Source: Macrostomum hystrix
Lineage: Eukaryota; Animalia; Platyhelminthes
DNA: 64,000 nucleotides
Reading direction: 5' to 3'
NCBI GenBank assembly: GCA_950097015.1
Contig: CATNEN010000011.1
Location: 3,348,001 to 3,412,000, forward strand
Under the pieces are notes generated by a model. The model was not told the DNA's origin and made no database searches. It saw only the letters and a program-made list of their open reading frames with translations. Positions 17,987 through 51,064 of this stretch are shown one piece after another. The position numbers were made by a program, and so were the translations under genes. The number at the start of each line of letters is the position of its first letter. Position 1 is the stretch's first letter.

Positions 17987-20066
17987 TCAATAATCCTTAG
18001 CATTTTGACCAGTTGAACCGCGCTCTCGCACCGCAGCTGACGGTTCGATTTCATCGGGTATGGGCAAATCCAGCTGCTTCACCAGCTCGTACTTATGACC
18101 GCCGGGTGCTGCGCTGGCCCTGGCTGCCATGCGCAGCATAATAATGGACGTCAGCAGCGCCAGAAACTTGAAGAACATTAGAAAGCCCTGGATCACAAAG
18201 AAGTAGCGATACTCGTATCTCTCGGCTATCATGGCGGTGACTGACGGTGACAGGGCCATGCCGACTCCCATTCCGGCAAGGCTAAATGGGTAGGCCAGGT
18301 GTCCCGGTAGGGTTGTCATCTCCTCGCCAGCCGGGAACAAGAATGTGATGCTCGGACCCATGCAGAAGCCTGACACGTAGGCTAGGAAATAGCTGAGCGT
18401 CTTGTTTGAAGCGACAACCTCCCAGTAGATGAGTGAGCAGGACATGAAAAATGTTGTAGTGCTCAGAATATATTTGAGTCGATTCTTTAGCAGATTCTTG
18501 GTGAGCACAGCGATGATGGCGGCAATGGCGTATGTTGATGCTTCGCCGGAAGCAAAAAGCAGAGTAAGATGAGAGCTCTTTGTTAAGGAGGCCTCCCTGC
18601 GTCGAACATAGTCTGCCAGGTTAAGTAACATCCCGTAGGTGACGATGCTAGTCATGATGCGATCGAAAAACCACAGTATCAGGTAGGGGATTTTCTCGCG
18701 CTCAACTTCCCAGATGGCGCCGAAACACTTTTTATCGTTGGCGTAGGGCGGCAGATCCTCGCGTTTAGTGAAGAAGACGCTGCCTGTGAGGTTCACGAAG
18801 AAATAAATGACGCCAAGGATGATGAACGCGTTTCTCCAGTTGTACATTTCGATCAGGTACGCGTACAGCTGAACGAACAGGATGGAAGCGATGGAGCCGC
18901 CGCTGACTAGAGTGGTGGCCAGGATGTGATAGGGGTGCTGCTTGTCGAAGTGCTCGTTAACCACCAGGCCGACAACGCTGAGAATGAGAGACGATCCGAT
19001 GCCGTGAAACAGGGTGTGGGTGAGGAACAGCCAGTGCGGACTGGGCACGAATGCGCTGGTGATACACGCGAGCAGTATGGCGAATGTTCCGGCAGCTTGG
19101 AAGAGCCGAAATCGGCGACCGTAGGCCAGGATGGCAGACGTACTCAGTGTCGTGGTCATATAGCCGAACGCTGCGTAGGAATCGCCAATCCAGTTTAGCT
19201 CAGCCAGTGTGATGGTCGAGTTGAACTCAACGTGAAGCTGAGCTACAAAGACGCCAAATGCGCGACGCTTACCACCGAGGAAGATGACATTGATGGCTGC
19301 GAAGGCCAGGATGAGCCACGCCCAGGTCTGCTGACGCTGGCGCTGCTGACTCGGCGGGCTGCGAAAAAGTTTGTTGCCAGTGAGATGAAAGATTTCAGCT
19401 TATATCCTTTGGATAATATAAACCAGGGGTCGGCAAACTCGACTCGCCAGATGCTCCCAAATCCGATCTCCGGTCCAGCTTACGGTCTTTCCCCTGTCTC
19501 ATCTCTCCTCAGTCTCGTCTCTCTTGTGTCTTATCCCTCCCCTGTCTCATCTCTTCCCTGTCTCATCTATCCCATGTCGCATCTTTACCGTGTTTCATCT
19601 CATCTCTGTCTCATCTCTGGCTCATCTCTGGCTCATCTCTGACTCATCTCTGACTCATCTCTGACTCATCTCTCGTGTGTCTTATCGCTCATCTTTACCG
19701 TCTCATCTCTCCCCTAGCTACAGTCTACAGTCAATGCGGCCTGCTATCGTCCTATAGGTTCTCTCTTTGGCCCGCTAGCTGCCGACCCCTGATTTAAACG
19801 ATAAAATCACAGCTATTACGCGGTGCATTCAATGATCTGTTGCTCAGTTCAGCCTCACTGACAAGCACACAAATCGTTTCCCTAAATAAATACAATAGAT
19901 CATAAGATTTGATTGAACAGTCGCAGAGATCACTCAAGTGCGCACTCACATTGTTCCTAGGTAAATATACTATTTAAATATAAAATAAAATGCCTCTGAA
20001 ATAGATTTTTGCTCCTTACCGATCCTCTTCTAAATCCTTGACGCACCTTAAACATGATTCTTTCAT
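17987..20066 (-). CDS. MFS transporter, monocarboxylate transporter (SLC16)-like, about 472 aa
   Basis: The reading frame extends upstream of the listed ORF to an acceptor at 19358 (QTWAWLILAFAAINVIFLGGKRRAFGVFVAQLHVEF...WIG, like the MCT TM1 motif). A phase-matched first exon lies at 20020-20066 (MKESCLRCVKDLEED, donor GTAAG). About 12 hydrophobic segments. The first exon is less certain. Confidence 0.85.
19424..19791. mobile_element. hAT-type MITE (same family as 3208-4137) in the intron of the SLC16-like gene
   Basis: Termini CAGGGGTCGGCAAACT and GCTGCCGACCCCTG. TSD ATATAAAC/ATTTAAAC. Internal TCTCATCTCT repeats. Confidence 0.8.
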
Positions 20067-22019: not shown

Positions 22020-23562
22020 GTCGCGATCCCCCGAATCCATGTGGGCGATCCCCCAAATCCATGTGGCGATCCCCCCGAATCCATGGTGGCTTCTCCCCCG
22101 AATCCATGGTGGCTTCTCCCCCGAATCCATGTGGCGATCCCCCCAAATCCATGGTGGCTTCTCCCCGGAATCCATGGTGGCTTCTCCACCGAATCCATGG
22201 TGGCTTCTTCCCCGAATCCATGGTGGCTTCTCCATCAAATCCATGGAGGCTTCTCCATCAAATCCATGGTGGCTTCTATACCGAATCCATGGTGGCTTCT
22301 CTACCGAATCCATGGTGGCTTCTCTACCGAATCCATGGTGGCTTCTCTACCGAATCTATGGTGGCTTCTCCATCAAATCCATGGTGCTTTCTCCCCCGAA
22401 TCCATGGTGGCTTCTCTACCGAATCCATGGTGGCTTCTCTACCGAATCCATGGTGGCTTCTCTACCGAATCCATGTTGGCTTCTCTACCGAATCCATGGT
22501 GGCTTCTCCACCGAATCCATGGTGGCTTCTCCACCGAATCTATGGTGGCTTCTCCACCGAATCCATGGTGGCTTCTCCCCCGAATCCATGGTGGTTTCTC
22601 CATCAAATCCATGGTGGCTTCTCCACCGAATCTATGGTGGCTTCTCCATCAAATCCATGGTGGCTTCTCCATCAAATCCATGGTGGCTTCTCCATCAAAT
22701 CCATGGTGGCTTCTCCATCAAATCCATGGTGGCTTCTCCACCGAATCCATGGTGGCTTCTCCATCAAATCCATGGTGGCTTCTATACCGAATCCATGGTG
22801 GCTTCTCTACCGAATCCATGGTGGCTTCTCTACCGAATCCATGGTGGCTTCTCTACCGAATCTATGGTGGCTTCTCCATCAAATCCATGGTGCTTTCTCC
22901 CCCGAATCCATGGTGGCTTCTCTACCGAATCCATGGTGGCTTCTCTACCGAATCCATGGTGGCTTCTCTACCGAATCCATGTTGGCTTCTCTACCGAATC
23001 CATGGTGGCTTCTCCACCGAATCCATGGTGGCTTCTCCACCGAATCTATGGTGGCTTCTCCACCGAATCCATGGTGGCTTCTCCCCCGAATCCATGGTGG
23101 TTTCTCCATCAAATCCATGGTGGCTTCTCCACCGAATCTATGGTGGCTTCTCCCCCGAATCCATGGTGGCTTCTCCATCAAATCCATGGTGGCTTCTCCA
23201 TCAAATCCATGGTGGCTTCTCCATCAAATCCATGGTGGCTTCTCCACCGAATCCATGGTGGCTTCTCCATCAAATCCATGGTGGCTTCTCCCCCGAATCC
23301 ATGGTGGCTTCTCCATCAAATCCATGGTGGCTTCTCCACCGAATCCATGTTGGCTTCTCCCCCAAATCCATGGTGGTTTCTCCCCCGAATCCATGGTGGC
23401 TTCTCCACCGAATCCATGGTGGCTTCTCCCCCGAATCCATGGTGGCTTCTCTACCGAATCCATGGTGGCGAACCTCTGAATCCATGGTGGCGAACCCCCA
23501 AAATCCATGGTGGCGAAACCCCAAAATCCATGGTGGCGAACCTTCAAAATCCATGGTGGCTC
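22020..23562. repeat. 23-bp minisatellite of about 1.5 kb
   Basis: Unit GAATCCATGGTGGCTTCTC(C/T)ACC with AAAT/CATC variants. Confidence 0.97.
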
Positions 23563-25512
23563 CACCGTGCAAAAATTTATGTAAATTTAATGTGCAGCAT
23601 GTGACATGGTGTCTACTGTGGAATCCAATACCAGATGCTTTAGAATGAAAATAACTGAGAAACCGATAATATATTGTCTATAAATTTACAAAAAATGTGA
23701 ACGTTATTAAACAAATGTTGAATAACAAACGGGCAAGTTTCTCTTTTACTGATTCGGCTTCTTGAACTTAAGCGAAGCTGAAATTTTATCGACAGATTCA
23801 TCAACCCGGTACCACCGGAGCAGATAACGATTTTTCTAGATTAATCGGGCCAAAAAACCGGACATCCAAATATAGTTTTTCCAGAGAAGAATGATAGTTT
23901 CCCCCTTTTTTGCGGTAATCAAACTTTATGAGGGATATTTTTTGGTACACGGTCTCGACATCCGTGATTTGAAATATTTGTCGAAAACGGCCTACCTTTC
24001 AGTTGGTGTTTCCTCTGGTATCATCGTGAATTAAGTACTTTTGCACTGGCCATATCGGATTCTTATCAAACCAGTTTAGATCATATCATGTATGTGAATG
24101 TCCCTGAATGCTACGAAATTAAACAAAAAATGTTTTCCAGCAAAAACGGATGTTTATCTATTCAGAACCAGGCGAGTGTTTTTATAGCCTCGGTGACTAA
24201 TAAAATTAATGCTGCATTCTTTATAATGAACAACGAAATGTCTATGGTTGAAACCATTAGAAAGACTATGGAAAGTCCACGACTGAGGTGCAGCGGGTGT
24301 TATACACGGCATGAAAATAGAATAATCAACATAAAATAACTCCAGTTTATACATTCATCTGCACGGTCGATAAAGCGAATTAGAATTTATTCTTGACTAA
24401 GGAGCAGGCGAGACTCATTTTGATTCAACTAGTCCCAGTTTCTCGAATATTTTACCGCTAAAATGTTGAATATAATAAATCCATCATACAAACGTGTATG
24501 ATTATTTATAGCTTTTGGTCGCAGAAATAAAGCCAGACAATGCACCCTGCTTCCTACATCAGACGCGTCTGTTCGCATTAAGCGATCCATTACATTCGTC
24601 CGCAGAAAGTGTCATATTTGGGTTAAGCCCGAAAAAGTGTGCGTTCTTAGGCCATTACAATTCCTAGTCTCGCGGAATCCTTGAAGAGTCTGGCGCCGCG
24701 GGTGCCAGTGATGGATAAACACAGCCTGAGCGGGCATCAGACATTTTACTATTGCAGGATTTTTGTACGCCTAAACAAATATACTGTCTAACAAAAGTTC
24801 TTGTACGGTTGCTTCTGTTGCCTCTAGTATCCATAATTTCCATCCGTTTCAAATGAAAATTAGTGCAAATGAAAGCTGGGAATCTCTGCAACATTTTCTG
24901 TTTCACCGTACGTATTTTTTTATTCTGGAGTGGCTCGGAACAGCTTGCCGCATAGCACAGACAGGTCGAATAAAAAAAGTGACAGAATGACATAGAGCAA
25001 GCAGTCTATGGCCAACTTTCTTCACGCGCTGACAAACTCCACAGAGTGTCTAGGAAGCCTTCTGTCGATCGATCGCTCTGTGTGTGGGGTTTGCTTTACT
25101 TCTTCACCCCAGGCGACATGTCTATGGCCTAAACTGTCGCACACTGTATAACCCTGTGCTTTGTTTTTGGTTTGTTTTACAAACTTTTGCAAGATTTTAA
25201 CGAACCAGATTTGTCCAGTCTGTTCAGTCCATGGACTGAGCGGAAGGAACCATCCCACTCAGTAACCCCTATTTCTTTCCCCTGTGTTGCAGGAACATGA
25301 CGCGCGCTTTAATATTTTAGGTGATGCAGACAAATGAGCATCGAGCGACGAGAGCTTCCCGCTGGACCACATCTCTTTAACCAATCACGTCAAGGCCAAC
25401 ATTGCGACTGAAGGAATTTCAATTCAGACAGCAAAGGAAGTTCTAAAGTCACAGGTAAAATGCATCAAAAGAACAAATCCTGTACGAAAAGCTTTATAGA
25501 AAATTCGAAGTG

Positions 25513-27651
25513 ATGCAAGCTGATAAAGCTCAAACGAACATCGAAAGCGCTTATACAATGGCCCAGCTTGATAGGCCAAATCAGCATGCATCTTTGCATT
25601 GTGGTCACGGAAGGAAAACATTAAAACCTGATAAACGTCCTCGAAAGCTCACCACCAATACGTTCAAGCTGCTGATCAATGAGTTCAACGACTATGGCCA
25701 CAGAACGACTGTGCACGGACTGGGCCACATGTACCAGTCCACAGATATTCGACGGAAGTTCTTCTGGCTCGTCATCACCATCATCGGCTGCGTGGCCTGC
25801 GGAGTTCACATCTACTTTATCGTGGCCAACTACAATGAGACGCCAGTGAATTCCGTCATTCTGAACGGCGGAGTTCACGTCACATTTCCAGATGTGACGC
25901 TGTGCAACATGTACCCGATCTCAGAGTCCGTGCAGTACCACGGAGCCAAGGATATCCGGAGACATATGCGCAACAAATGGCAGTTCTTCCGCGGCTTCAT
26001 CAACGCCTCCACCGGACAGGAGAACAGCACCATTGACCGATTCAAGATGGCCAGGAAGTTCTTTCAGATCTTCTGGGCCTCCGAGGACACAAGAGACCTC
26101 GCTCACGACGATAATCTTTTCTTAGCGTACTGCCGGTACAAAAGACGCGAATGTACTGACGAGCACTTCAAAATGGTGCAGAATATTCTTTACTGGAACT
26201 GCTACACATTCACGCCAAAGTTCGAAGGTGAAGAAACAGAGGACAGGCGAGTGTACAGTGGTAATGAAGACGAAGGACTAAACCTAATCATTTATACCAA
26301 TTCCCATCTAAGAAGACTTCATGCGGATGACGGCTATACGACAGTCAAAGGCTTTCACTCACACGATAAATTTGGTCATCATAACACGGGTGAAGATCAT
26401 TCGAATTTTCTAGAACGCTACCTGATAAACTACAATCTGTCCCTTAATCAGCTGCTTGCAGGTGATAGGTTGGAGCCCGACGGTATTCGAGTGATTCTGC
26501 ACGAGAAGGGAACCTACCCGCACATGGACATGAACAGCGTGACTGTCGGCAACGGTGACTACTCAAACATCATCTTCTCGATGGAGCGCAAGATCTCGAA
26601 AAACCGGCCCGATCACCCGTGTCGAGAGACGTCCGATGAGTCCGATGAAGACGAGGTGGAGTATGTCTCCTACTACCCCGGGTTCGACATCAGGAACCCC
26701 GGACCGAAGCCGCCGCCCAACTTCAAGAAGTTCAAGCGCGATCGACTCGACTATGTGGTGGCTCGGACCCAGGAGCTGTTCTGGTCTAACTGCGGCTGCT
26801 ACACCCACGTGACGCCCTACCAGCACTTCAACTCCAAGTTGTGCTACTTCTGCAGAAACGGCACGGATCCCGTCGAGATCGATCGCACTCTCAAGCGAGT
26901 CGAATGCCACGACAAAGTCTACGAGAACCAGCTGAAGAAGAAAATCCTCACCTTCTTCACCGACTCGCAACGCTTCCAGCCGTGCACTGGCGACGACTAC
27001 AACGTGAAGATGGGTAGCTCTGCGTGGCCGAGTCAGCGGGACATTCACTTTCTCGTGAACCAGTACGTGATTCCCAAATTTCTAGACGAGAGTGTGGGCA
27101 ACCGATCGTACAACAGCATTCTGAAGAAGACCAGAGTCTTTCCCATTCGCGACATCATCGAGGCGATTCCCGAAAATGTGATCGGCTCAAAATCCAGCTC
27201 AAAGTCGTTCAACTGGACTGCTCAAGAGTTTCTCATTCGCAAGAGCTTCTTGAAGGTGGCCATCCATGCGGACAGTCCGACTGGAGCACTCAACGAGGAG
27301 GTCGAGAGCTACTCGTTCGCCGAGGCTCTCTCCGAGATCGGGGGCATCTTCGGGCTCTACGCCGGCGTGTCGCTGCTGACTTTCTTCGAGTTCGTAGAGC
27401 TCGCCTACCTTATGGCCACGAAGCCGAAGGAAGTCAAGCTGCAGGAGTTGGACGGCAAGTCCAAGTTCGCGATGCTGCAGCAGGCCATGGTCGAGGACGA
27501 GCTGCCGCAGAGCGAACTGCACAAGTACAAGCAGCTGTTCGATCACGGCAACTGCTGCTCGAGGGCCTCTGCGGGCGCGGCGCACCAGTGCAAGAACCTC
27601 ATCCTGGAAGCTGAAAGAGAAGACTCAGAACGAGGACATGCTTTTTTATAG
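25513..27651 (+). CDS. DEG/ENaC (amiloride-sensitive sodium channel family) subunit, intronless CDS, copy A, about 712 aa
   Basis: N-terminal HG motif (TTVHGLGH), TM1, FPDVTLCN, NCYTF, GLNLIIY...GIRVILH, thumb cysteines, and TM2 ALSEIGGIFGLYAGVSLLTFFEF with a GxS filter. The first ATG is 25513 (the ORF track starts at a GTG). Confidence 0.95.
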   Translation: MQADKAQTNIESAYTMAQLDRPNQHASLHCGHGRKTLKPDKRPRKLTTNTFKLLINEFNDYGHRTTVHGLGHMYQSTDIRRKFFWLVITIIGCVACGVHIYFIVANYNETPVNSVILNGGVHVTFPDVTLCNMYPISESVQYHGAKDIRRHMRNKWQFFRGFINASTGQENSTIDRFKMARKFFQIFWASEDTRDLAHDDNLFLAYCRYKRRECTDEHFKMVQNILYWNCYTFTPKFEGEETEDRRVYSGNEDEGLNLIIYTNSHLRRLHADDGYTTVKGFHSHDKFGHHNTGEDHSNFLERYLINYNLSLNQLLAGDRLEPDGIRVILHEKGTYPHMDMNSVTVGNGDYSNIIFSMERKISKNRPDHPCRETSDESDEDEVEYVSYYPGFDIRNPGPKPPPNFKKFKRDRLDYVVARTQELFWSNCGCYTHVTPYQHFNSKLCYFCRNGTDPVEIDRTLKRVECHDKVYENQLKKKILTFFTDSQRFQPCTGDDYNVKMGSSAWPSQRDIHFLVNQYVIPKFLDESVGNRSYNSILKKTRVFPIRDIIEAIPENVIGSKSSSKSFNWTAQEFLIRKSFLKVAIHADSPTGALNEEVESYSFAEALSEIGGIFGLYAGVSLLTFFEFVELAYLMATKPKEVKLQELDGKSKFAMLQQAMVEDELPQSELHKYKQLFDHGNCCSRASAGAAHQCKNLILEAEREDSERGHAFL

Positions 27652-28189
27652 ACCGTATGTCTGGCATTGCTTGGAATATTTTTTTACCAAAATTCACTGT
27701 CGTTGTGATCGTACTGAAGCGGAATTACTGCTGATTTAGGTGGCTAAGTAGCTTAGACGTTTATATCGTGTTATATTTTATTTTCGAAGCAGAACATTTT
27801 ATGCTTGATATAAAAAATTTATTATACATGCTTTTGCCATTTTTTGTGTTGTTGATGAACATTTTTTTTTATTCGAGTTGATTTGCACAGTCTGAAAAGT
27901 GTACTATCAGTAGTACGCAATGAATAAGGCTTAATTCCTACATCGAAATTAGCAATTGGCAATTGGGTAACATAAAGTTAGCCCATAGACCGTACTTATG
28001 GAAATAAAAACAAACTGCTGATGGTCTGCAGTTGGGGATAACCAGTTCCGGTGACTTTCTGAGATGCGTTTCGCCGTTTTGTCACGTGCCACCGATCAGT
28101 AAGGACTCGAGAAAGGTTAGGGCTCGCTTGAAAACAAATCTTTTTGACATGGGTGCTCGCAAAATGCGGACACAATTGAGCAAAACATC

Positions 28190-28375
28190 TCTGTGGCTCT
28201 GTGGTTCTGTGGTTCTGTTCTGTGGCTCTGTCGTTCTGTGATATGTGGCTCTGTGGCTCTGTGGCTCTGTGGCTCTGTAGTTCTGTGGTTCTGTGGTTCT
28301 GTGGTTCGGTGGCTCAGTGGTTCTGGGTTCTGTTTTTCTGTGGCTCTGTGGTTCCGTGGTTCTGTGGTTTTGAGG
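28190..28375. repeat. 8-bp simple repeat (CTGTGGYT)n
   Basis: Tandem CTGTGGCT/CTGTGGTT units. Confidence 0.9.
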
Positions 28376-28984
28376 ATCATTTTGGTTCTGTAATAATTTT
28401 TGGTTCAGACCACATAAAATAATAATTTAGGCTGCTTATAGCTCTTTCTGTGGTCGCTTCTATGCTCATATTGCACCACAGAATATCGGATATTCTGTGC
28501 ATTGGTCTGATGTTTTTTGTACAGAAATAATATCTTACAGTTGAAGGGACGAAGTTACATAAAAAAGTTTTCAGTTGAAAATTCAGCAGCTTACACAGGG
28601 TAAGGCTTACTCCGCATGGAAAACACATTTCAACCTTCTAAACGGGGTCTAGAGTTGATGGAAAACTCAAATAGGCTCTTCCTTGGAAAGCGTGTTCTTT
28701 AATAAGGCCTGTCCATTTTTGCAAGCTTTAAAAAGTCCATAGCTACTACGTTTGAGTTTGTGTTTGGCAACGCAACAGACTGTGAGGAAAATGGCTGTGC
28801 GATTGTTGAGGCAGAATGCTAAATAATTGAATAATTAAACCACGGAGGCCCCACTCAAATTTCTGCAAGCAGGTGACAATTCTCATAATAAAAAGGGGTG
28901 AAAATGTCGTGAAAGCCAAACTTCTGGAAACTCAGCCACTTAAAACTAACAAGGCAGGCAGCAGCCAGGCGACAGGCCAAGACG

Positions 28985-29731
28985 ATGCACCCAATCCTAC
29001 TCTACATTGTGAGCAGTGCCGCAGCCTTCTGTTCTCTGGCCTTTCAAACCAGTCTGAACTTCTCGGAGACGACCGCACCGCTGTGCATTCAGAGCCAGTT
29101 CGTTGAGACTCCTACCGGTGTGCGCAGCGACATGGAATGCGCAGTCCGATGCGCCAGGAACGATCGCTGCCAGGCCTTCAGTCTGCACTTTGGACCCTGC
29201 CAACTGTTCGTGTTCGACAAGTGCAGCAAGAATGTGCGCGACTGTGGCGTCTGCAACCGCTCAGGTCGACTGTACATCAAGCAGCAGGTCGGACTGCCAG
29301 CAGGAGCGCTGTGCCCTAGCGGATTCTCTGACGACCTGTGCGGCGCAAAGTACAAGCTGGTGGCCGGCACGAGCTGGAACGCGTACAAGACTGTCGCCGA
29401 TGCTCAGCCGGGACTCGTCATCATGGCCGACGTGATGGACGCGACCGAGTGGTCTCACCTGCTGAATATTACGATCAGGATGGGTTGGACTCTTGAGATG
29501 TTCGGCGGCATGCAGGCTCCGGGAAGTCCCGAGCCAGCAGAAGGCTGGTACTGGGTGAGCTGCAACATCCCCCTCAGCGGCACCAGCAGCCTCTGGCGGG
29601 GCGGGGAGCCAAACAATGTGGGTGGAAGCGAAAACTACGTGTTAGGAAATCGTGTGAAATTACTGGACGGCACTGAATTTCATTCGTCAGTGAATGGCGG
29701 CTTCTTGGAGTGCGTTTCGCCGTTTGATTAA
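28985..29731 (+). CDS. Secreted PAN/apple + C-type lectin domain protein, intronless, 248 aa
   Basis: Signal-peptide-like N-terminus. PAN-type ECAVRCARNDRCQAFSL...CQLF. CTLD features CPSGF, WYW, and WRGGEPNN (EPN) followed by EN. Confidence 0.8.
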   Translation: MHPILLYIVSSAAAFCSLAFQTSLNFSETTAPLCIQSQFVETPTGVRSDMECAVRCARNDRCQAFSLHFGPCQLFVFDKCSKNVRDCGVCNRSGRLYIKQQVGLPAGALCPSGFSDDLCGAKYKLVAGTSWNAYKTVADAQPGLVIMADVMDATEWSHLLNITIRMGWTLEMFGGMQAPGSPEPAEGWYWVSCNIPLSGTSSLWRGGEPNNVGGSENYVLGNRVKLLDGTEFHSSVNGGFLECVSPFD

Positions 29732-30439
29732 TTGACACTTGATGTTTGACTACTTTACAAATGGAAATATTTCGATTTCCACAGCTTTGCTTCTGCCTTT
29801 GAAAATGCACAAAAATCCACTCTTCTGATCGACAGTCGACTTTAACTTTGTTAAAGTTACGGCTGTCTCTCATGCCTCACACTTAAGATGATAGTTCCTA
29901 ATGTTTTTGTCGACGTTTTAAACTATACTTTACGACAGGCATCGGGAAAAAAACAAAAGAACTTACCTCTTACCTCTTTGCTTGCCAGAATAAATTTTAA
30001 ATGACTAGGTTTCGTCTTTAGATTCTTTAGAGCTATGGTTAAAATATTTTTTTCTTTTCTCATTGTTAGGCAGTGTTCAGTCTCATTGTGCCTTTAAGCT
30101 TGGTTATTTCATGGTTATTATTTCATTTAAAACTACAAGTAAAACTGCTAGCATCATAATTACGCAAATCACTTAAAAGCATCCTCTTGGCAACTCGTAC
30201 CAGCTCATAAAACATCGTATGGTTTTCCCGAAAGGGTCTCGGAAGGGCCCACGCACACGAGTGGCCAATCTGCAGCCCAAAGTCAACAATTGTCAACATC
30301 GTGTTGACAAATGTACTAAGTCTATATCGGGTGTCCTAGGTCTCCCTGCGACTACAAATGTAAATCTGGCAAAGTTTAGTTATGTTCGAAGAGTGTAGCA
30401 TTCTAGAGGTGAGGCATTGAGTGGCAGATCAGTATAACA

Positions 30440-30748
30440 CATTTGCCTCTCGCACCAAGCTCCCTGAACTCGATTCCGTGACGAGGCCACATTAATTTGG
30501 GGCCGCAGTCCAAGGTTCAACTTGCAAGGCACTGCAGTAACTGCCTGACGATGAGAAAGTCAGGGCAGATGTACACACCTGTGTGAACGTGCACAGGTGT
30601 AGATATATTACACATACGGTATCTGTGTGTGTATGCTCAGGAGTCAGCGAAATGGGCAGAATTGCCTCCTCGCTGGCTGCAGGGCAAGTGTAACAAAATA
30701 ATGTGCCATTGCCTGCAGCCCTCCTGCAATTATATTATTATTATTATC
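30440..30748 (+). mobile_element. Dispersed repeat copy (AAAGTCAGGGCAGATGTACAC family) ending in (TAT)n
   Basis: Aligns by eye with 55535-55760 and 13055-13220. 3' tail TATTATTATTATTAT. Confidence 0.65.
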
Positions 30749-31892
30749 ATTCTAAAAGTAAGTTTGGGGTCATATCTCGAATTGTTGTAGCGGGAAGAGC
30801 GATCAACGATAGGAACAAAACAAATCTACTGCCCCACTTCTAACAGGCGCCATGCAGCACACCCTGATTGTTAGTGTAACCTTAATCTGCAACCTAAAAA
30901 CTGTTTGGTGTAACTGGGGGCATAAAAACCTGACTTGCTTCAATCGATTGCATAGTTATATTATCTAGGTCCGTTATCTAGCCCGAATCTCCCAGCACAG
31001 GGAAGTTAGAAGAGGGGGCGCAATGTTGAAAGCAAAGCAACCAGACAGACAGATGGTTACGTATGCTTTATAGACTGAATACTGCAGTGGGAATGTTCAT
31101 GCCCAAAATACCTTGGCCAGGTGAATCACCATGCAGGCCGCAGGTGGAATCCACTGGTGTTTGGCGGGCAACGAAAACAAGTCCAGGGCAGCAACTAACA
31201 GCGGCTTACAGGCCCATTACATAATCGATCAATCACGCGCATGGTCTGACCACACAATATCCCGAAATTCTCTCTTTTCTTCTAGTGCAGCCTCCATTCT
31301 ACATTTGTACGATTTCTCTGTTAAATGCATTTATTCAACCAGGGTAAACCAGCACCTCTCATAGTTATTACCGCTAATTCTACTTGAGAGCTCTCTTATG
31401 TGGCGTCGCGCACTAGCCTGTAGACTGAGTGAGTATTTACTGAGGCCTAAGTTTTTGCAAACTTGGGTCCTAAAATATCAGTTTGTCAGCTAAATTAGAA
31501 AATATTTAGCCTCTTAAACAAAATCATTAGATTTTCTACCTTAACATAAAATTCTTCCAATTTAGTTATTTATGCCTTGAAAAGCTCAGAACATAGACAG
31601 AACACAGAAAAAACTGAATTGATTCCGCATCTTCATGCAAATTACAAGTATTAATCACAATTAAGAAAGTTGGTACACTTGCAGTTTATATAGCAAGTTA
31701 TAGTCAGCAGTTAAAAATCGTGTAACGCAAAGGAAAATATTAGGGCACATGAATATATAGAAGGCACTGTACACTCACAACATGCATTAGATCCAGGAAA
31801 CAACAGTTTAAAAAGGCTGGGAAGATCGCCACTTTATTTTGTTGATTTTCAGTCTTTCAAATAAAAATGATGATTCATTTGTAGAACATCAG

Positions 31893-34127
31893 TCAAGCCA
31901 CAATGACCGGACGTCGAACAGAACCATCCCTTTCAGCTTCCAGGATGAGGTTCTTGCACTGGTGCGCCGCGCCCGCAGAGGCCCTCGAGCAGCAGTTGCC
32001 GTGATCGAACAGCTGCTTGTACTTGTGCAGTTCGCTCTGCGGCAGCTCGTCCTCGACCATGGCCTGCTGCAGCATCGCGAACTTGGACTTGCCGTCCAAC
32101 TCCTGCAGCTTGACTTCCTTCGGCTTCGTGGCCATAAGGTAGGCGAGCTCTACGAACTCGAAGAAAGTCAGCAGCGACACGCCGGCGTAGAGCCCGAAGA
32201 TGCCCCCGATCTCGGAGAGAGCCTCGGCGAACGAGTAGCTCTCGACCTCCTCGTTGAGTGCTCCAGTCGGACTGTCCGCATGGATGGCCACCTTCAAGAA
32301 GCTCTTGCGAATGAGAAACTCTTGAGCAGTCCAGTTGAACGACTTTGAGCTGGATTTTGAGCCGATCACATTTTCGGGAATCGCCTCGATGATGTCGCGA
32401 ATGGGAAAGACTCTGGTCTTCTTCAGAATGCTGTTGTACGATCGGTTGCCCACACTCTCGTCTAGAAATTTGGGAATCACGTACTGGTTCACGAGAAAGT
32501 GAATGTCCCGCTGACTCGGCCACGCAGAGCTACCCATCTTCACGTTGTAGTCGTCGCCAGTGCACGGCTGGAAGCGTTGCGAGTCGGTGAAGAAGGTGAG
32601 GATTTTCTTCTTCAGCTGGTTCTCGTAGACTTTGTCGTGGCATTCGACTCGCTTGAGAGTGCGATCGATCTCGACGGGATCCGTGCCGTTTCTGCAGAAG
32701 TAGCACAACTTGGAGTTGAAGTGCTGGTAGGGCGTCACGTGGGTGTAGCAGCCGCAGTTAGACCAGAACAGCTCCTGGGTCCGAGCCACCACATAGTCGA
32801 GTCGATCGCGCTTGAACTTCTTGAAGTTGGGCGGCGGCTTCGGTCCGGGGTTCCTGATGTCGAACCCGGGGTAGTAGGAGACATACTCCACCTCGTCTTC
32901 ATCGGACTCATCGGACGTCTCTCGACACGGGTGATCGGGCCGGTTTTTCGAGATCTTGCGCTCCATCGAGAAGATGATGTTTGAGTAGTCCCCGTTGCCG
33001 ACAGTCACGCTGTTCATGTCCATGTGCGGGTAGGTTCCCTTCTCGTGCAGAATCACTCGAATACCGTCGGGCTCCATCTTGTCTCCCGCCAGCAACTGGT
33101 TCAATGAGAGATTGTAGTTTATGAGGTAGCGTTCTAGAAAATTCGAACGATATCCACCAGAGTCTTGACCGTCGCGGCGTTGGCTGTAAAAGCCATTAGT
33201 TGTGGTCAAGCCATTGCTCGCATGAATTTTTCTCAGGTGCGAGTTCGTGTACAGGATGAGGTTCAGACCTTCATCCTCGTTGCCACTGTACACTCGCCTG
33301 TCTTCTTCTTCCTCGCCTTCAAATTTGGGCGTAAAGGTATAGCAGTTCCAATAGTCAATGTTCTGCACCATTTTAAACTGCTCATTGGAGCAAACCCTGC
33401 TTTTGTAAGTGCAATCGACAAGGAAAAGATCATCGTCGTGAGCGAGGTCTCTTGTGTCCTCGGAGGCCCAGAAGATCTGAAAGAACTTCCTGGCCATCTT
33501 GAATCGGTCAATGGTGCTGTTCTCCTGTCCGGTGGAGGCGTTGATGAAGCCGCGGAAGAACTGCCATTTGTTGCGCATATGTCTCCGGATATCCTTGGCT
33601 CCGTGGTACTGCACGGACTCTGAGATCGGGTACATGTTGCACAGCGTCACATCTGGAAATGTGACGTGAACTCCGCCGTTCAGAATGACGGAATTCACTG
33701 GCGTCTCATTGTAGTTGGCCACGATAAAGTAGATGTGAACTCCGCAGGCCACGCAGCCGATGATGGTGATGACGAGCCAGAAGAACTTCCGTCGAATATC
33801 TGTGGACTGGTACATGTGGCCCAGTCCGTGCACTGTCGTTCTATGGCCATAGTCGTTGAACTCGTTGATCAGCATCTTTAAAGTTTCTGTGGACTTTTTT
33901 TTCCTTCGATTGGTTTGCTGTTGTCTAGGGAGCATTGTCTGGGCTGGATGATGTGCAGCAGGCTGCTGACCGGACATGTCTGAAGCTAGTGCCGTGGACT
34001 CAGGTGCAGTCGTCTCCATCTGTTGCTTCGCGGTATTGACTCTCGATACTTCTCTTTGATCCCCATTCTCAAGTTTTTCATTTTTGTTGTCATAGTTTAC
34101 AGCACCGACGCCCTGATGCAGCTGCAT
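31893..34127 (-). CDS. DEG/ENaC subunit, intronless CDS, copy B (inverted paralog of copy A), 744 aa
   Basis: Same motifs as copy A. Most of the protein is identical to A. The N-terminus, extreme C-terminus and one extracellular block differ. Confidence 0.95.
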   Translation of the reverse strand: MQLHQGVGAVNYDNKNEKLENGDQREVSRVNTAKQQMETTAPESTALASDMSGQQPAAHHPAQTMLPRQQQTNRRKKKSTETLKMLINEFNDYGHRTTVHGLGHMYQSTDIRRKFFWLVITIIGCVACGVHIYFIVANYNETPVNSVILNGGVHVTFPDVTLCNMYPISESVQYHGAKDIRRHMRNKWQFFRGFINASTGQENSTIDRFKMARKFFQIFWASEDTRDLAHDDDLFLVDCTYKSRVCSNEQFKMVQNIDYWNCYTFTPKFEGEEEEDRRVYSGNEDEGLNLILYTNSHLRKIHASNGLTTTNGFYSQRRDGQDSGGYRSNFLERYLINYNLSLNQLLAGDKMEPDGIRVILHEKGTYPHMDMNSVTVGNGDYSNIIFSMERKISKNRPDHPCRETSDESDEDEVEYVSYYPGFDIRNPGPKPPPNFKKFKRDRLDYVVARTQELFWSNCGCYTHVTPYQHFNSKLCYFCRNGTDPVEIDRTLKRVECHDKVYENQLKKKILTFFTDSQRFQPCTGDDYNVKMGSSAWPSQRDIHFLVNQYVIPKFLDESVGNRSYNSILKKTRVFPIRDIIEAIPENVIGSKSSSKSFNWTAQEFLIRKSFLKVAIHADSPTGALNEEVESYSFAEALSEIGGIFGLYAGVSLLTFFEFVELAYLMATKPKEVKLQELDGKSKFAMLQQAMVEDELPQSELHKYKQLFDHGNCCSRASAGAAHQCKNLILEAERDGSVRRPVIVA

Positions 34128-34883: not shown

Positions 34884-35527
34884 GAGGTAAGTGGCTGATG
34901 CGGCCTGAGGTAAGTGACTGAGCCTGAGGTAAGGGACTGAGCCTGAGGTAAGTGACTGAGCCTGAGGTAAGTGACTGAGCCTGAGGTAAGTGACTGAGCC
35001 TGAGGTAAGTGACTGAGCCTGAGGTAAGTGGCTGAATGAGGCCTGAGGTAAGTGGCTGAATGCGGCCTGAGGTAAGTGACTGAGCCTGAGGTAAGTGGCT
35101 GAATGAGGCCTGAGGTAAGTGGCTGAATGCGGCCTGAGGTAAGTGACTGAGCCTGAGGTAAGTGGCTGAATGAGGCCTGAGGTAAGTGACTGAATGAGGC
35201 CTGAGGTAAGTGGCTGAATGCGGCCTGAGGTAAGTGGCTGAATGAGGCCTGAGGTAAGTGACTGAACCTGAGTTAACTGGCTGAATGAGGCCTGAGGTAA
35301 CTGGCTGAATGCGGCCTGAGGTAAGTGGCTGAATGCGGCCTGAGGTAACTGGCTGAATGAGGCCTGAGGTAAGTGGCTGAATGCGGCCTGAGGTAACTGG
35401 CTGAATGAGGCCTGAGGTAAGTGGCTGAATGCGGCCTGAGGTAACTGGCTGAATGCGGCCTGAGGTAACTGGCTGAATGAGGCCTGAGGTAACTGGCTGA
35501 ATGCGGCCTGAGGTAACTGGCTGAATG
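34884..35527. repeat. 19/24-bp minisatellite, about 29 units, each containing GAGGTAAGT or GAGGTAACT
   Basis: Units CCTGAGGTAAGTGACTGAG and CCTGAGGTAAGTGGCTGAATG(C/A)GG. Confidence 0.95.
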
Positions 35528-36123
35528 AGACCTAATTAAGGGCCACATCAAATTTAGAAATGTAATAGAACGCAAAATGCTAAAAGCGAGTTGTCCCGAT
35601 CAAATCTAAAAAATAAGCTGCCCTACCCAGGCAGACAATGTGGCGCAACGGAAATTCCCCGCTAATTATCTGCAGCTGCAGCAAGTCCTGCCGTAGCAAC
35701 CACTTAAAAGTTGAAAACAACGCAGGGCAGTCATACGTACCCTCTGTTTGCCTCAGGTGCAGTCGCAGCATGGAAACTATTGTTATATGAACTTCATAGT
35801 ACAGAATGCACAGCATACACTACTAGCTTGGTGGCTGCATGGAATTCGTGATCGAAAGAATCAAGGGAAAAAAACTCATTGCGCCATTAGAAAGCGGTGG
35901 AAGCGTTTTCTCCTTCACTCCAACTGTAGGAAATGTCTGATAAAAGTTCAGCGTAGGCCATGGATTTATGGCATCTATCTAGACATAAAAAATTATGGAT
36001 TAGTCTGAACTACGCGCGTAGTTCGCACCGATTTGAATTCCGTGATAAATTTTATTCCGGAAAATTTTAGTTATTTCAATCTCGATTTTGAGGCACAGGT
36101 TTTAGCCAAGAATATAAAACAGC

Positions 36124-36609
36124 TAGGGGTCGTCAAACTCCGGCCCACGGGCCAGATGCGGCCCTCGAAGCAACCTAAATCCGGCCCGTTGCCCCTACCA
36201 ACACCTACAGTTTCCTGTCTATCCTTCCCCTCTCATCTCTGCCGTGTCTCATCTCTCCCGTGTCTCATCTCTCCCGTCTCATCTCTGCCGTGTCTAATCT
36301 CTCCCGTGTCTCATCTCTCCCATGTCTCATCTCTCCCGTGTCTCATCTCTCCTGTGCCTCATCTCTCCTATGTCTCATCTCTCCGATGTCTCATCTCTCC
36401 TGTGTCTCATCTCTCCTATGTCTCATCTCTCCCATGTCTCATCTCTCCCGTGTCTGATCTCTCCCGTGTCTCATCTCACCCCTGTCTCATCTCTCCTGTG
36501 CCTGATCTATCTCCCATGTCCTATTTCTACTGTGAATACGGCCCACTGTCGTCTTTTAGGTTCTGTATTTGGCCCTGCTAGCTAATACATGTAAGTTTGT
36601 TAACCCCTG
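36124..36609. mobile_element. hAT-type MITE (family of 3208-4137, opposite orientation) with internal minisatellite
   Basis: Termini TAGGGGTCGTCAAACTCCGGCCC and AAGTTTGTTAACCCCTG. Internal TCTCATCTCTCCCGTG repeats. No clear TSD. Confidence 0.75.
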
Positions 36610-37176: not shown

Positions 37177-40100
37177 TCACCAACGAGGAGACAGTCGGTC
37201 TGGGGCGACTCCCTTGGTCGACCTGCAGCTTCGTCGGGGCTCCGGTGTAGCTTCAGCGGTCTGCTGCGGTGGTGCCGCTGCGTCTGGCCGCTGGCTATCA
37301 GGTTCCGGGTTCCGGCCGCCTTCGTCAGGGTTCCGGCCGCCGTCGTCAGGGCTCCGACCGGCATCGTCAGGATCCCGGCCGCCGTCGTCAGTGTTGTCCG
37401 TAACTTCCGCCCGGCTTGGACTCGGACACAAACGCAGCTGATCCCGGTGTGCCAGCACAGGCCTGTCGTCCTTGTCCCGGGTGACCACGGCCGTGTTGTG
37501 GCCGGCCTGTACCACAAAGCGGACGGTCTCAGCCGGCACCCCCGGTCGCGACTAGTAGACGAGCGGCGCATCGGTGTCGAATTGGAGGGTCAGCGGACTT
37601 CGCAGCTGTCGCCCCATAAGCGCAGACGGACTGCCACGCCCGTCGCCCCGCGGAGTGGCCCGGTAGTTAAGCAGCAGCTTGGCGAGGTACGCGTCGAACC
37701 TGCCCTGGTGCACGGCGAAGGCCCGCAGCCCCTTCTTGACGGTCTGGACCATGCGCTCGGCGCACCCGTTTGACTGCGGATGATACGGCGGCGAGTGCAT
37801 CGGCGAGCAGCCGATCTTCTTGAGCCACTCGTGCAGCTGCTGGTCACGGAACTCCGGAGCATTGTCCGCCACCAAGGTATGCGGCACACCCAGGCGGGAA
37901 AAAATCAAGCGGAGCACCTTGATGACCGTCATCGCGCTCTTGTCGGCAACAGGCACCGCTTCCGGCCAGCCGGAGAAGGCGTCCACCACAATGAGCAGCA
38001 GGCCGAAGCCGGGAACGTGAGCATGGTCCATGTGCACGCGTCTCCAGGGACCATTTTCCGCCGGCCAGGTGTGGCACGTTCTGGCAGGCATTGGACGGAT
38101 CTCCGCGCATCGCTGGCATTGCTTGACGAAGTTTTCGACGTCCTCGCAGTGACCCGGCCAACAGGCTTCCAGCTTGAGTCGATTTCTTGTCGCTAGGGCA
38201 CCGCAGTGCGAGTCGCCGTGAGCCGCTCGCAGCACGTCTTGCCGCAGCCGGCTAGGCGGGACCACCAGGTCTCTCAGGCAGACGACGCCACTCTCCACTG
38301 AGAGCTGCTGGCGGACGGCTTTATACGGTCGCTCCGCTGCCGAGCAGTTGTTCCACGCATTGCTGCGGATCCTGCGCTTGACGCTGGCGAGCACCGGGTC
38401 ATTGTCAGTGGCGTCTCTGATCTGCTCCAGCTTGAGCACCTCCGTCTCTGTCCAGTGAACGAAGCTTTCCTGGAAGTCGTCTCCATCGCCTTCCTCCTTG
38501 AATTCAATTCGAGACAGCGCGTCGACATGCGGGATGCAACTGCCCTTGATGTACGAGATTTCGTAGTCGAAGGCCGACAGCTGCAACGCCCAGCGCATGA
38601 TCCTTGCCGATGTGACCTTTGGAAGCTCCCGAGACGGACTAAAAATGAACTCCAATGGTTGATGATCGCACTGGAGCACAAACTTGCTGCCGAGAAGAAA
38701 GTGTCTGGCTCTCTGAGTGGCCCACACCACAGCCAGGGCCTCTCGCTCGATATTCGAGTAATTTCTCTCAGCCGGTGTCAGCCGTCTTGACAGGTACATC
38801 ACTGGGTGCTCGTCCTGAGAGAGGATTGCTGCTATGGCCTTCTCGCTGGCGTCAGTAGTCAGAGTTGTGCGCTTTCTTGCATCGAAGATTCGGACCACTG
38901 GGGAAGCTGCAAGCGCCTGCTTGAGCTCGTCAAACGCTTTCTGCTGCCGAGGTCCCCAATGGAACGCGACTTTCTTGCTCCGCAGCTCGGTCAGCGGCTC
39001 GGTCTTTTCCGAGTAGGACTTGATGTAGCGCGAGTAGTACACCGTCATTCCTAGAAACGATTCGAGTTCCTTTTTGCTCGCCGGGGTGCTCACGCCGAGG
39101 ATTTTCTCCACCAGCTTCCGATCAGGGCGCACGCCGTCAGCCGCGATGCGGTAGCCGTGCTGCGGAAAACGCATTTTTTTTCGTTGATCGACATGCCGGC
39201 ATCAGAAAGCGCTCTCAGCAGGTCCCGGACTTTGCTGTCCAATTCGTCCGCTGTGGTGGCGCCAACGCACATGTCGTCTTGGTAGATCACCAGGTTGCTG
39301 ACCGCACCGCCGACCGTTGCCTCCATGGCAGCCTGGAACTGCGCACTGGCCGTCTTCACCCCGAATGGCATGCGCGTCCATCTGAGCAGGCCTAGGGGCG
39401 TGATGATGGTGAGTATTTCTCTGGAGGCCTCGTCTAGCTCAATCTGGTTGTAGGCATTTGTTAAGTCTACAATTGCGAAGTGCTTCATACCTGCCAGGGC
39501 ACTGAAGGCTTGCTCGATGTTGGGCAGTGGGTAGGCGTCAGAGCAGATCTTCGGGTTCACCCCGACCTTGTAGTCGGAGCAGATTCTCAGGTCTCCGTCG
39601 GCCTTGCGCACCACCACAATGGGCGATGCCCAACTGCTGCCGCCTGGCGGCACAGGCTCGAGGATCCCGGCGTCGATCATCGTCCGCAGCTTAGCCACCA
39701 CCAGCGGCTTGAGATGAATCGGGAGCGGCCGGGCATCGAAGAAGCTGGGCTGAGCGTTCTCCCTGAGCAGGACCCGAGCACGGAAACCTTTGAGCTTGCC
39801 TAGCGGTTTGCTGCTGCGCTCCACTTGATTGACAGTCGCTGTGTCCAGCTTGAAGTCCAGCACGTCTGTTCCGATGAGGCCGTGCTCCTTTGTGCACTCA
39901 GTGACCGTCACGTCCGCACAGGCGATTTGTCTCCCGACTTCGATGAGCGCCGTGAAGCATCCTCTAGTTCTGATGACTGTTCCGTCAAATTGTCGCAGTC
40001 TCAACTTGGACTTTCGTAGCTTGGGCTCACCGAGGCTCCTCCAGAAGTTTATCGGAATGATGCTCGCACCGGATCCAGAGTCGAGCTGCATTTTGAACGG

Positions 40101-47610: not shown

Positions 47611-47644
47611 TAAATACTTGAGCATGATTAGCTAGTATTTTTAC

Positions 47645-51030: not shown

Positions 51031-51064
51031 TAAATACTTGAGCATGATTAGCTAGTATTTTTAC

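What the first reader, a model, noticed from the sequence alone, without database searches (positions are those of the whole stretch)
25513..34127. Inverted DEG/ENaC pair homogenised except for one extracellular block covering the beta6-beta7 loop
Seen: copies A (+) and B (-) face each other across a 4.2-kb spacer. They look identical at the DNA level over about 25711-26111 and about 26473-27614; even the off-frame ORFs (161 aa and 196 aa) are identical, and I saw only one synonymous change near the boundary. The block between them (A about 26112-26470, B about 33075-33435) carries many amino-acid changes. These are densest between beta6 GLNLI(I/L)Y and beta7 GIRVILH: RLHADDGYTTVKGFHSHDKFGHHNTGEDH versus KIHASNGLTTTNGFYSQRRDGQDSGGYR. 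Known: inverted repeats are homogenised by intrachromosomal gene conversion, and in peptide-gated FaNaC channels the finger domain and beta6-beta7 loop shape the ligand pocket. Inference: these are two subunits with an identical pore but different ligand specificity, with conversion selected against only in the sensing block.
Basis: partly seen in the sequence, partly recalled or inferred. Interest (0 to 1): 0.75.

Follow-up and report, generated by a model that had tools for sequence, protein, structure and literature searches.

The report
Flatworm channel gene pair, partly homogenised
Two facing copies of a FaNaC-like sodium-channel gene in a Macrostomum flatworm keep overwriting each other by gene conversion, except for an old 360-base extracellular block. 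The same pair with the same boundary occurs in a second species, so this is a real but familiar kind of "divergence island", and its functional meaning is untested.

Summary
Observation confirmed. Copy A (25513-27651, +) and copy B (31893-34127, -) are intact, intronless DEG/ENaC genes. They are identical over 402 nt and over 1143 nt (one synonymous difference). Between these tracts lies a 360-nt block that is 72% identical at DNA level and 73% at protein level, with silent sites near saturation.

New evidence: Macrostomum lignano carries the same convergent pair in conserved synteny. Its copies are homogenised independently. In tract 2, 199 sites group by species and none by copy type. The 5' edge of that tract falls at the same codon (321/322) in both species. 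This is long-running concerted evolution around an old island. It is not an assembly artefact or a recent duplication.

Interpretation partly supported. B keeps the ancestral block. A and its M. lignano counterpart share derived residues and evolve about 2.5 times faster there. However:
- The finger helices are identical between A and B.
- The hypervariable loop is not conserved within a copy type.
- Loop dN/dS is about 0.85.
- The type-grouping tree is not significantly better than the species tree.
- The cytoplasmic tails also differ.

Selection and a passive divergence barrier cannot be told apart here. Ligand specificity is untested.

The parts
25513..27651 (+). Copy A: intronless DEG/ENaC (FaNaC-like) gene, 712-713 aa. 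It is the derived, faster-evolving copy type.
   Evidence: ORF. Pfam ASC full length, E 2.5e-50. HG motif at 25711-25728, TM1 at 25759-25833, GVS filter at 27364-27372. AlphaFold pLDDT 82.8.
31893..34127 (-). Copy B: intronless DEG/ENaC gene, 744 aa. It is the ancestral-like copy and the orthologue of M. lignano P0001.
   Evidence: ORF. Pfam ASC, E 2.3e-52. N- and C-termini and block resemble P0001. Upstream synteny with the M. lignano locus.
25513..25650 (+). Type-specific N-terminal cytoplasmic tail of A. It does not align with B's tail (33894-34127, minus strand).
25711..26112 (+). Homogenised tract 1 in A (402 nt, 100% identical to B 33432-33833). It covers the HG motif, TM1, beta1-beta2 and finger helices alpha1-alpha3.
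33432..33833 (-). Homogenised tract 1 in B.
26113..26472 (+). Divergence island in A (codons 202-321). It covers beta3-beta5 (beta-ball), the beta5-beta6 loop, beta6 and nearly all of a 62-residue beta6-beta7 insertion.
33075..33431 (-). Divergence island in B (codons 233-351).
26311..26403 (+). Hypervariable core of the island in A (codons 268-298; B 33144-33233). It is 40% identical in amino acids, with dN 0.53 and dS 0.62, and model confidence is low here.
26473..27615 (+). Homogenised tract 2 in A (1143 nt, 1 synonymous difference at 26556). It runs from beta7 through palm, thumb, knuckle and TM2 to the proximal C-tail.
31932..33074 (-). Homogenised tract 2 in B.
27616..27651 (+). Type-specific C-terminal tip of A (EREDS-type, shared with MlA). 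B's tip (31893-31931) is GSVRRPVIV-type, shared with MlB.
27652..31892 (.). Unique 4.2-kb spacer between the convergent 3' ends. It is not conserved with the 3.4-kb M. lignano spacer.

Best explanation
A and B are an old, convergently oriented pair of FaNaC-like DEG/ENaC paralogues in a Macrostomum genome. The genome's size and contig count match the published M. hystrix assembly.

The duplication and the inverted arrangement predate the split from M. lignano. Since then, repeated arm-to-arm (interlocus) gene conversion has kept most of the coding sequence identical within each species while it diverged between species. This is concerted evolution.

Three modules escape conversion and carry the copy-type identity:
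- the N-terminal cytoplasmic tail;
- the last ~11 codons;
- a 360-nt extracellular island (beta-ball strands, beta6 and a family-specific 62-residue beta6-beta7 insertion).

Shown: the conversion mosaic, its independence in two lineages, the shared boundary at codon 321/322, the ancestral state of B, and the faster, shared-derived evolution of the A type.

Inferred: the island was first established because differences there were favoured in the A-type subunit, an extracellular sensing or assembly surface next to the site that binds peptide in FaNaCs. It is now also protected passively, because 28% divergence blocks heteroduplex formation. The stated confidence (0.85) is for the conversion-plus-ancient-island history. 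I put only about 50-55% on selection having created the island, rather than a neutral barrier alone.
For: - Identity profile and codon map.
- Permutation test, 0 of 10,000.
- The same convergent pair in M. lignano L021, and again in L030.
- Tract 2: 199 nt and 76 aa sites with A=B differing from MlA=MlB, against 0 grouping by type. Within-species dS is about 0-0.01 and between-species dS is 0.62.
- The last differences fall at codons 320-321 in both species, and identity starts at 322.
- Island amino-acid sites group 5 by type, 2 by species and 0 crosswise: T/S216, H/Q219, V/T279, R/K320, L/M321. Outgroup C carries the B state at 216, 219 and 320. Both A types also depart from a residue conserved in B, MlB and C at 212, 217, 227 and 273.
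- The ML amino-acid tree groups by type. A-type branches are 0.32-0.36 plus a 0.13 stem. B-type branches are 0.13-0.14 plus a 0.02 stem.
- C-terminal tips are type-specific across species.
- Synteny upstream of B and MlB is conserved.
- No other donor for A's block exists in the genome.
- Purifying selection acts inside the island: codons 228-267 have dN 0.04 with silent sites saturated. A is therefore functional and not a decaying copy.
- GC3 is 0.76-0.86 in converted tracts and 0.35-0.64 in unconverted parts, which is compatible with GC-biased conversion.
- A peak of divergence within converting duplicates is a recognised signature of selection (PMC3924837, PMC3728101).
Against: - The AU test does not reject a by-species tree for the island (p = 0.41). 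At nucleotide level the island is saturated and uninformative: 8, 10 and 9 sites for the type, species and cross patterns.
- Loop dN/dS is about 0.85, not above 1.
- The hypervariable loop is less alike within the A type (29%) than between A and B (40%).
- In M. lignano tract 1 also escapes full homogenisation, so the island is not uniquely protected.
- Silent divergence in the island is saturated even between the presumed orthologues B and MlB (4-fold sites 0.76 against 0.43 in tract 2). This is not explained.
- The single-copy paralogue C has high GC3 everywhere, so the GC3 contrast is not proof of biased conversion.
- Only two species could be compared.
- The exact 100% identity could be slightly inflated by short-read polishing (PMC10468722).
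Confidence: 0.85

Rival explanations
1. Passive barrier only. The conversion history is the same, but the island persists merely because it is too diverged (about 72% identity, with an indel) for heteroduplex formation. Its amino-acid differences reflect relaxed constraint on a surface insertion, not selection for different function. This rivals only the selection component of the best explanation.
For: - Loop omega is about 0.85 and the model confidence there is low.
- The loop is variable in every comparison and not conserved within a type.
- Conversion also stops at the non-homologous C-terminal tips, so tract ends coincide with ends of usable homology.
- An inherited barrier explains the shared boundary in both species without ongoing selection.
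- In M. lignano other 5' segments also remain unconverted.
Against: - A 360-nt segment flanked by actively converting sequence should have been co-converted while divergence was still low. Something had to let it diverge first.
- A and MlA share derived residues at otherwise conserved beta-ball positions.
- There is a consistent 2.5-fold rate asymmetry between the types.
- Strong purifying selection acts on parts of the island.
Confidence: 0.4
2. Imported block. A and B were fully homogenised, and then A's block was replaced in one step by ectopic conversion from a third, more distant paralogue. That would create an instant island with no selection.
For: It would explain saturated silent sites beside perfect identity. 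The genome holds many DEG/ENaC paralogues.
Against: - No donor exists in the assembly. The best non-self matches to A's block are B (73%) and paralogue C (74%).
- The A-type signature is shared with MlA, so any import would have to predate the species split.
- A's block is not closer to C than B's is (64% against 71% amino-acid identity).
Confidence: 0.06
3. Assembly or polishing artefact. The identical tracts would arise from collapse, palindromic chimeric reads, or Pilon polishing with cross-mapped short reads.
For: The assembly matching this genome was built with canu from PacBio reads and polished with Arrow and Pilon (PMC10468722). Polishing can erase a few real differences between near-identical paralogues.
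Against: - The arms have unique flanks, different termini and a unique 4.2-kb spacer.
- An independently assembled genome of another species shows the same pair, the same orientation and the same mosaic.
- 199 species-specific substitutions are shared by both arms in tract 2, which polishing cannot produce.
Confidence: 0.03
4. Recent duplication followed by very rapid adaptive divergence or hypermutation of the block.
For: There is a high density of replacements in the loop.
Against: - Silent sites in the island are near saturation while adjacent tracts have none.
- The pair exists in M. lignano with type-specific termini.
Confidence: 0.02

Closest known systems
Divergence peaks in duplicates undergoing gene conversion: human red/green opsin exon 5, RHD/RHCE, GOT1 paralogues of Tigriopus (Teshima and Innan model; PMC3924837, PMC3728101)
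   Same: Paralogues are kept near-identical by interlocus conversion except for a short segment of high divergence that holds the functionally distinguishing residues. The pattern persists across speciation.
   Different: Here the copies are a convergent inverted pair of intronless ion-channel genes in a flatworm. The island is larger (360 nt) and silent-site saturated. No functional difference is known. Formal support for selection (omega, topology test) is lacking.
Arm-to-arm gene conversion in palindromes and inverted repeats (for example the primate Y-chromosome palindromes; my own knowledge)
   Same: Inverted arms separated by a short unique spacer are homogenised intrachromosomally and evolve in concert in separate lineages.
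   Different: The arms here are only about 2 kb and lie wholly inside coding sequence. They are interrupted by an internal island and bounded by non-homologous gene termini. They are not long non-coding arms.
FMRFamide-gated sodium channels (FaNaC; Aplysia 7yvb/7yvc, Malacoceros FaNaC1 8on7-8ona)
   Same: This is the best sequence match among solved structures (7yvb, E 3.7e-26, against ASICs at about 1e-13). It is also the best structural match (8on8, E 2.8e-27). The DEG/ENaC architecture is shared: HG motif, two TM helices and a GxS filter.
   Different: Identity is only 15-18%. The beta6-beta7 connection is about 62 residues here, against 8 (D234-G241) in FaNaC1 (PMC11026163). No evidence of peptide gating exists. 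Three M. lignano channels from the FaNaC-sister branch did not respond to FMRFa, YMRFa or two Wamides (PMC9234716). Whether those three include this pair's orthologues could not be established.

Membership tests
DEG/ENaC superfamily (Pfam ASC, PF00858) | Full-length match to the family profile above the curated threshold | tested here: met
   A scores 172 bits and B 179 bits against a cut-off of 23.6, covering profile positions 1-455 of 455.
DEG/ENaC superfamily (Pfam ASC, PF00858) | Two transmembrane helices flanking a large cysteine-rich extracellular domain, a pre-TM1 HG motif and a TM2 GxS filter | tested here: met
   HG at A 69-70, TM1 at 84-108, GVS at 619-621, TM2 at 610-636. The AlphaFold model has the expected helices and strands. 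Conserved cysteines appear in the family alignment.
DEG/ENaC superfamily (Pfam ASC, PF00858) | Fold similarity to solved DEG/ENaC subunits | tested here: met
   Foldseek gives FaNaC1 8on8 at E 2.8e-27 (TM 0.69 on target) and ASIC1 at about 1e-22.
DEG/ENaC superfamily (Pfam ASC, PF00858) | Trimeric Na+-selective channel activity | not testable with these tools
   Needs expression and electrophysiology.
FaNaC (neuropeptide-gated) family | Closest relationship to FaNaCs among characterised channels | tested here: met
   FaNaC is the top hit by sequence and by structure. No phylogeny against the whole superfamily was built here. The literature places M. lignano genes in a sister branch, not inside FaNaC (PMC9234716).
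FaNaC (neuropeptide-gated) family | Compact pocket formed by alpha1-alpha3, a short beta6-beta7 loop and the neighbour's alpha6 | tested here: not met
   The beta6-beta7 connection is 61-63 residues in this clade, against a median of 22 in 112 homologues and 8 in FaNaC1 (PMC11026163).
FaNaC (neuropeptide-gated) family | Activation by FMRFamide or related peptides | not testable with these tools
   There is only indirect literature: three M. lignano relatives were unresponsive (PMC9234716).
Concerted evolution by interlocus gene conversion | Paralogues more alike within a species than orthologues are between species, although the duplication is older than the speciation | tested here: met
   In tract 2, within-species dS is 0-0.01 and between-species dS is 0.62, with 199 species-pattern sites and 0 type-pattern sites. 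The arrangement, termini and synteny are shared.
Concerted evolution by interlocus gene conversion | Mosaic with abrupt tract boundaries beyond chance | tested here: met
   Identical runs of 1061 and 402 nt, with 0 of 10,000 permutations matching.
Concerted evolution by interlocus gene conversion | GC enrichment of converted tracts (biased conversion) | tested here: inconclusive
   GC3 is 0.76-0.86 in the tracts and 0.35-0.64 in the island and tails. Single-copy paralogue C is 0.71-0.87 throughout.
Selection-maintained divergence island (Teshima-Innan type) | Peak of divergence flanked by homogenised sequence | tested here: met
Selection-maintained divergence island (Teshima-Innan type) | Island groups by paralogue type across species | tested here: inconclusive
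   Amino-acid sites split 5 type, 2 species and 0 cross. The ML tree groups by type, but the AU p for the species tree is 0.41.
Selection-maintained divergence island (Teshima-Innan type) | Excess of replacement over silent change at the target | tested here: not met
   In the loop dN is 0.53 and dS 0.62. Across the whole island dN is 0.19 with silent sites saturated.
Selection-maintained divergence island (Teshima-Innan type) | Demonstrated functional difference mapping to the island | not testable with these tools
   Needs chimeras and electrophysiology.

The most novel reading that the evidence does not exclude
The island is a selection-protected specificity module. The A-type and B-type subunits of an orphan FaNaC-sister channel share the pore and most of the ectodomain. 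They differ in a beta-ball plus beta6-beta7 insertion surface that sets ligand recognition or heteromer assembly. Gene conversion has, in effect, produced a clean domain-swap pair in at least two species. That pair would point directly to the determinant of gating in a channel clade whose activator is unknown.
Probability: 0.3. Interest if true: 0.65.

Novelty: new member of a known kind. Interest (0 to 1): 0.45.

Why it matters
This is a clean, twice-replicated example of concerted evolution with an internal divergence island, found in an ion-channel family where this has not been described as far as my searches showed. Flatworm channels of the FaNaC-sister branch are orphans: no activator is known (PMC9234716). 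Here nature provides two subunits that are identical except for a defined extracellular block and the cytoplasmic tips. That tells an electrophysiologist which chimeras to make. For evolutionary genetics, the conserved boundary across a deep split in the genus allows a test of selection against a passive divergence barrier, if more Macrostomum species and population data are added. The process itself, gene conversion with a divergence peak, is well known.

Tried and rejected
- A third-paralogue donor for A's block was sought in the whole genome by DNA and protein search. None is closer than 74%.
- Nucleotide-level topology tests on the island were uninformative because of saturation. A first attempt with bootstraps failed or timed out. 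The sub-alignment without the loop was never written, so it was not tested.
- Dating the island by dS was abandoned. Silent sites in the island are saturated in every comparison, including the presumed orthologues.
- The A-type M. lignano protein is not on record as an annotated gene. Orthologues therefore had to be read directly from the locus.
- The second and third M. lignano contigs (L030, L031) are 95-98% identical to L021 or truncated, so they are not independent replicates.
- Conservation of the spacer between species was tested and none was found.
- Model coordinates are not exposed, so the spatial clustering of type-specific residues relative to the finger could not be computed.
- The identifiers of the three M. 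lignano genes tested by Dandamudi et al. could not be mapped to P0001 or MlA.
- The large ORFs upstream of B (42.6-54.5 kb) are translations of satellite repeats with spurious Pfam hits.

Full report
**What is there**

The window is G000:C11:3,348,001-3,412,000 of a 220,453,370-base genome in 42 contigs. The nearest public proteins are from Macrostomum lignano. The size and contig number equal those published for the Macrostomum hystrix assembly, which was built with canu from PacBio reads and polished with Arrow and Pilon (PMC10468722).

Copy A (25510/25513-27651, +, 713 aa) and copy B (31893-34127, -, 744 aa) are uninterrupted ORFs. Both match Pfam ASC PF00858 over its full length. Both carry the HG motif, TM1, a GVS filter and TM2. 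Their 3' ends face each other across a unique 4.2-kb spacer.

**Check of the observation**

The repeat finder reports the two inverted arms. A codon-level alignment gives the following:
- A 25711-26112 is identical to B 33432-33833 (402 nt).
- A 26473-27615 matches B 31932-33074 (1143 nt) with one synonymous difference, at 26556.
- The island at A 26113-26472 / B 33075-33431 has 119 aligned codons plus one indel. It is 73% identical in amino acids and about 72% in DNA.
- In the island, 40 of 87 codons that encode the same amino acid differ at silent positions.

Across 1995 aligned nt there are 128 differences, yet identical runs of 1061 and 402 nt. None of 10,000 permutations reached that.

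The N-terminal tails and the last 11 codons also differ. A 60-nt zone of 83% identity precedes tract 1.

**Fine structure of the island**

| Codons | Amino-acid identity, A vs B | Other measures | Structural element |
|---|---|---|---|
| 202-227 | 62% | — | beta3-beta4 and start of beta5 |
| 228-267 | 95% | 23 of 38 conserved codons differ silently; dN 0.04 | beta5, beta5-beta6 loop, beta6 |
| 268-298 | 40% | dN 0.53, dS 0.62 | first half of the beta6-beta7 insertion |
| 299-321 | 91% | silent sites again diverged | second half of the insertion |

The island is therefore old and partly under strong purifying selection, so copy A is a working gene.

**Comparative evidence (new)**

M. lignano contig NIVC01001178.1 (L021) carries P0001 (10001-12220, +). 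A second, convergent 699-aa ORF lies at 15608-17707 (-), across a 3.4-kb spacer. I call these MlB and MlA. MlA is not on record as an annotated gene. The pair recurs on a second contig, L030.

Orthology rests on three observations:
- B and MlB share N-terminal motifs and a GSVRRPVIV-type C-terminus.
- A and MlA share an EREDS-type C-terminus.
- The genes upstream of MlB (a NUDIX-like gene and a JmjC gene, L031) match the region upstream of B in the same relative orientation.

The duplication and the inverted arrangement therefore predate the split of the two species.

**Concerted evolution**

In tract 2 (codons 322-702) the copies are identical within each species: A/B have 1 difference and MlA/MlB have 4 scattered differences. 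Between species they are 82% identical in DNA, with dS 0.62. There are 199 nucleotide and 76 amino-acid sites with A=B differing from MlA=MlB, and none grouping by type.

In both species the last differences are at codons 320-321 (R-L in the A types, K-M in the B types), and identity begins at codon 322. Two independent random tract ends would coincide to within a codon in roughly 1% of cases. The edge is therefore a stable, inherited barrier.

In M. lignano tract 1 is only patchily homogenised (86% DNA identity), with differences in TM1 and the finger.

**Which copy is derived**

In the island, B agrees with MlB, with paralogue C (G000:C30, L003, 69% identical overall) and with P0002. A departs from them.

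| Position | A types | B types | Outgroup C |
|---|---|---|---|
| 216 | T | S | S |
| 219 | H | Q | Q |
| 279 | V | T | I |
| 320 | R | K | K |
| 321 | L | M | L |

Type-pattern amino-acid sites thus number 5, against 2 species-pattern and 0 cross-pattern sites. In addition, both A types abandon a residue conserved in B, MlB and C at positions 212, 217, 227 and 273.

The ML amino-acid tree groups by type. A-type branches are about 2.5 times longer than B-type branches. However, the AU test does not reject the by-species tree (p = 0.41), and the nucleotide data are saturated.

No other sequence in the genome could have donated A's block.

**Structural placement**

The closest solved relative by sequence is Aplysia FaNaC (7yvb, E 3.7e-26). 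ASICs score about 1e-13.

An AlphaFold model of A, built from a 112-sequence alignment, has pLDDT 82.8 and pTM 0.77. It is most similar to Malacoceros FaNaC1 (8on8, E 2.8e-27), then to ASIC1.

In the model (numbering = A minus 1), beta6 is residues 256-261 (GLNLI...) and beta7 is 324-330 (GIRVILH).

The connection between beta6 and beta7 is 62 residues long, with short predicted helices and low confidence at 270-300. Among 112 homologues the median connection length is 22. Only the closest 13 or so have 50 or more. In FaNaC1 the loop is D234-G241. Together with alpha1-alpha3 and the neighbouring subunit's alpha6, it forms the FMRFamide pocket (PMC11026163).

The finger helices of A and B (model 138-190) lie in tract 1 and are identical.

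**Interpretation**

The conversion mosaic and its age are well supported. The island marks where the A type differs extracellularly from the ancestral B type, near the region that binds peptide in FaNaCs.

Theory and precedents treat such a divergence peak as a signature of selection against conversion (PMC3924837, PMC3728101). The need for the segment to diverge initially, despite converting flanks, argues the same way.

Against this stand several points:
- Loop omega is about 0.85.
- The hypervariable loop is not conserved within the A type across species.
- The topology test is weak.
- At 28% divergence, heteroduplex formation would fail with or without selection.

I therefore keep selection and a passive barrier at roughly even odds.

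Functional claims about ligand specificity remain untested. The only relevant experiments report no peptide response from three M. lignano channels of the FaNaC-sister branch, and their correspondence to this pair is unknown (PMC9234716).

**Unexplained**

Silent divergence in the island is saturated even between B and MlB: 4-fold sites 0.76, against 0.43 in tract 2.

| Segment | GC3 |
|---|---|
| Converted tracts | 0.76-0.86 |
| M. lignano's patchy tract 1 | 0.61-0.65 |
| Island | 0.46-0.64 |
| Loop | 0.35-0.44 |
| Tails | 0.09-0.52 |
| Single-copy paralogue C | 0.71-0.87 throughout |

GC-biased conversion in the tracts, with AT-ward decay of unconverted parts, would fit this gradient but is not shown.

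**Artefact rival**

Unique flanks and a unique spacer, an independent assembly of another species with the same mosaic, and 199 species-specific substitutions shared by both arms together exclude collapse or chimeric reads. Short-read polishing could at most have erased a few residual differences.

**Verdict**

This is a real feature. It is a new example of a known evolutionary pattern, in an orphan flatworm channel clade. It is of moderate interest as a natural domain-swap pair and as a test case for selection against a passive barrier. A neighbouring LTR-retrotransposon ORF pair was only observed.

Noticed in passing
L021:15608-17707 (-) (M. lignano NIVC01001178.1); also L030:15768-17860: The A-type partner gene of P0001 is an intact 699-aa ORF, but no gene with this product is on record for the public M. 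lignano annotation. In the second contig (L030) the tblastn match is split near residue 148-150. That suggests a frame break or a long-read indel error.
   Followed up: partly
window 37552-41009 (-): Two overlapping long ORFs carry aspartyl protease, reverse transcriptase, RNase H and integrase domains (Ty3/gypsy-like LTR retrotransposon pol). They lie about 3.4 kb upstream of copy B. Observed only.
   Followed up: partly
window 28985-29731 (+): A 248-aa cysteine-rich ORF lies inside the spacer. It has only sub-threshold PAN-domain hits (E about 0.05) and a C-terminal stretch reminiscent of a C-type lectin EPN motif. It has no counterpart in the M. lignano spacer.
   Followed up: partly
window 44433-55168 (-) versus L031:1-10000: Exons similar to the JmjC/Cupin_8 gene upstream of MlB occur three times in the window (for example 45198-45327, 48624-48753, 52044-52173). 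A NUDIX-like exon occurs once (54836-55162). The long ORFs there are satellite translations with spurious Lambda_Kil hits.
   Followed up: partly
window 23000-23574; 28201-28390; 34884-35590; 36186-36537: Minisatellite arrays with periods of 23, 8, 19/24 and 16 nt flank the channel pair and sit in its spacer. The 19/24-nt array begins about 750 nt upstream of B's start codon.
   Followed up: no
window 17987-19159 (-): A 390-aa ORF matches the Major Facilitator Superfamily (MFS_1, E 4.6e-18).
   Followed up: no
window 25510-27651 and 31893-34127; L021; L003: Third-codon-position GC tracks the degree of homogenisation: 0.81-0.86 in tract 2, 0.35-0.64 in unconverted parts, and intermediate in M. 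lignano's patchily converted tract 1. The unpaired paralogue C is GC3-rich throughout. This may be a footprint of GC-biased interlocus conversion.
   Followed up: partly
G000:C10:3165217-3165474 / C33:5188977-5189234, and C10:297522-298394 / C41:378107-378979: Other DEG/ENaC fragments give identical scores on different contigs. They are either further recent duplicates or residual haplotigs in the assembly.
   Followed up: no
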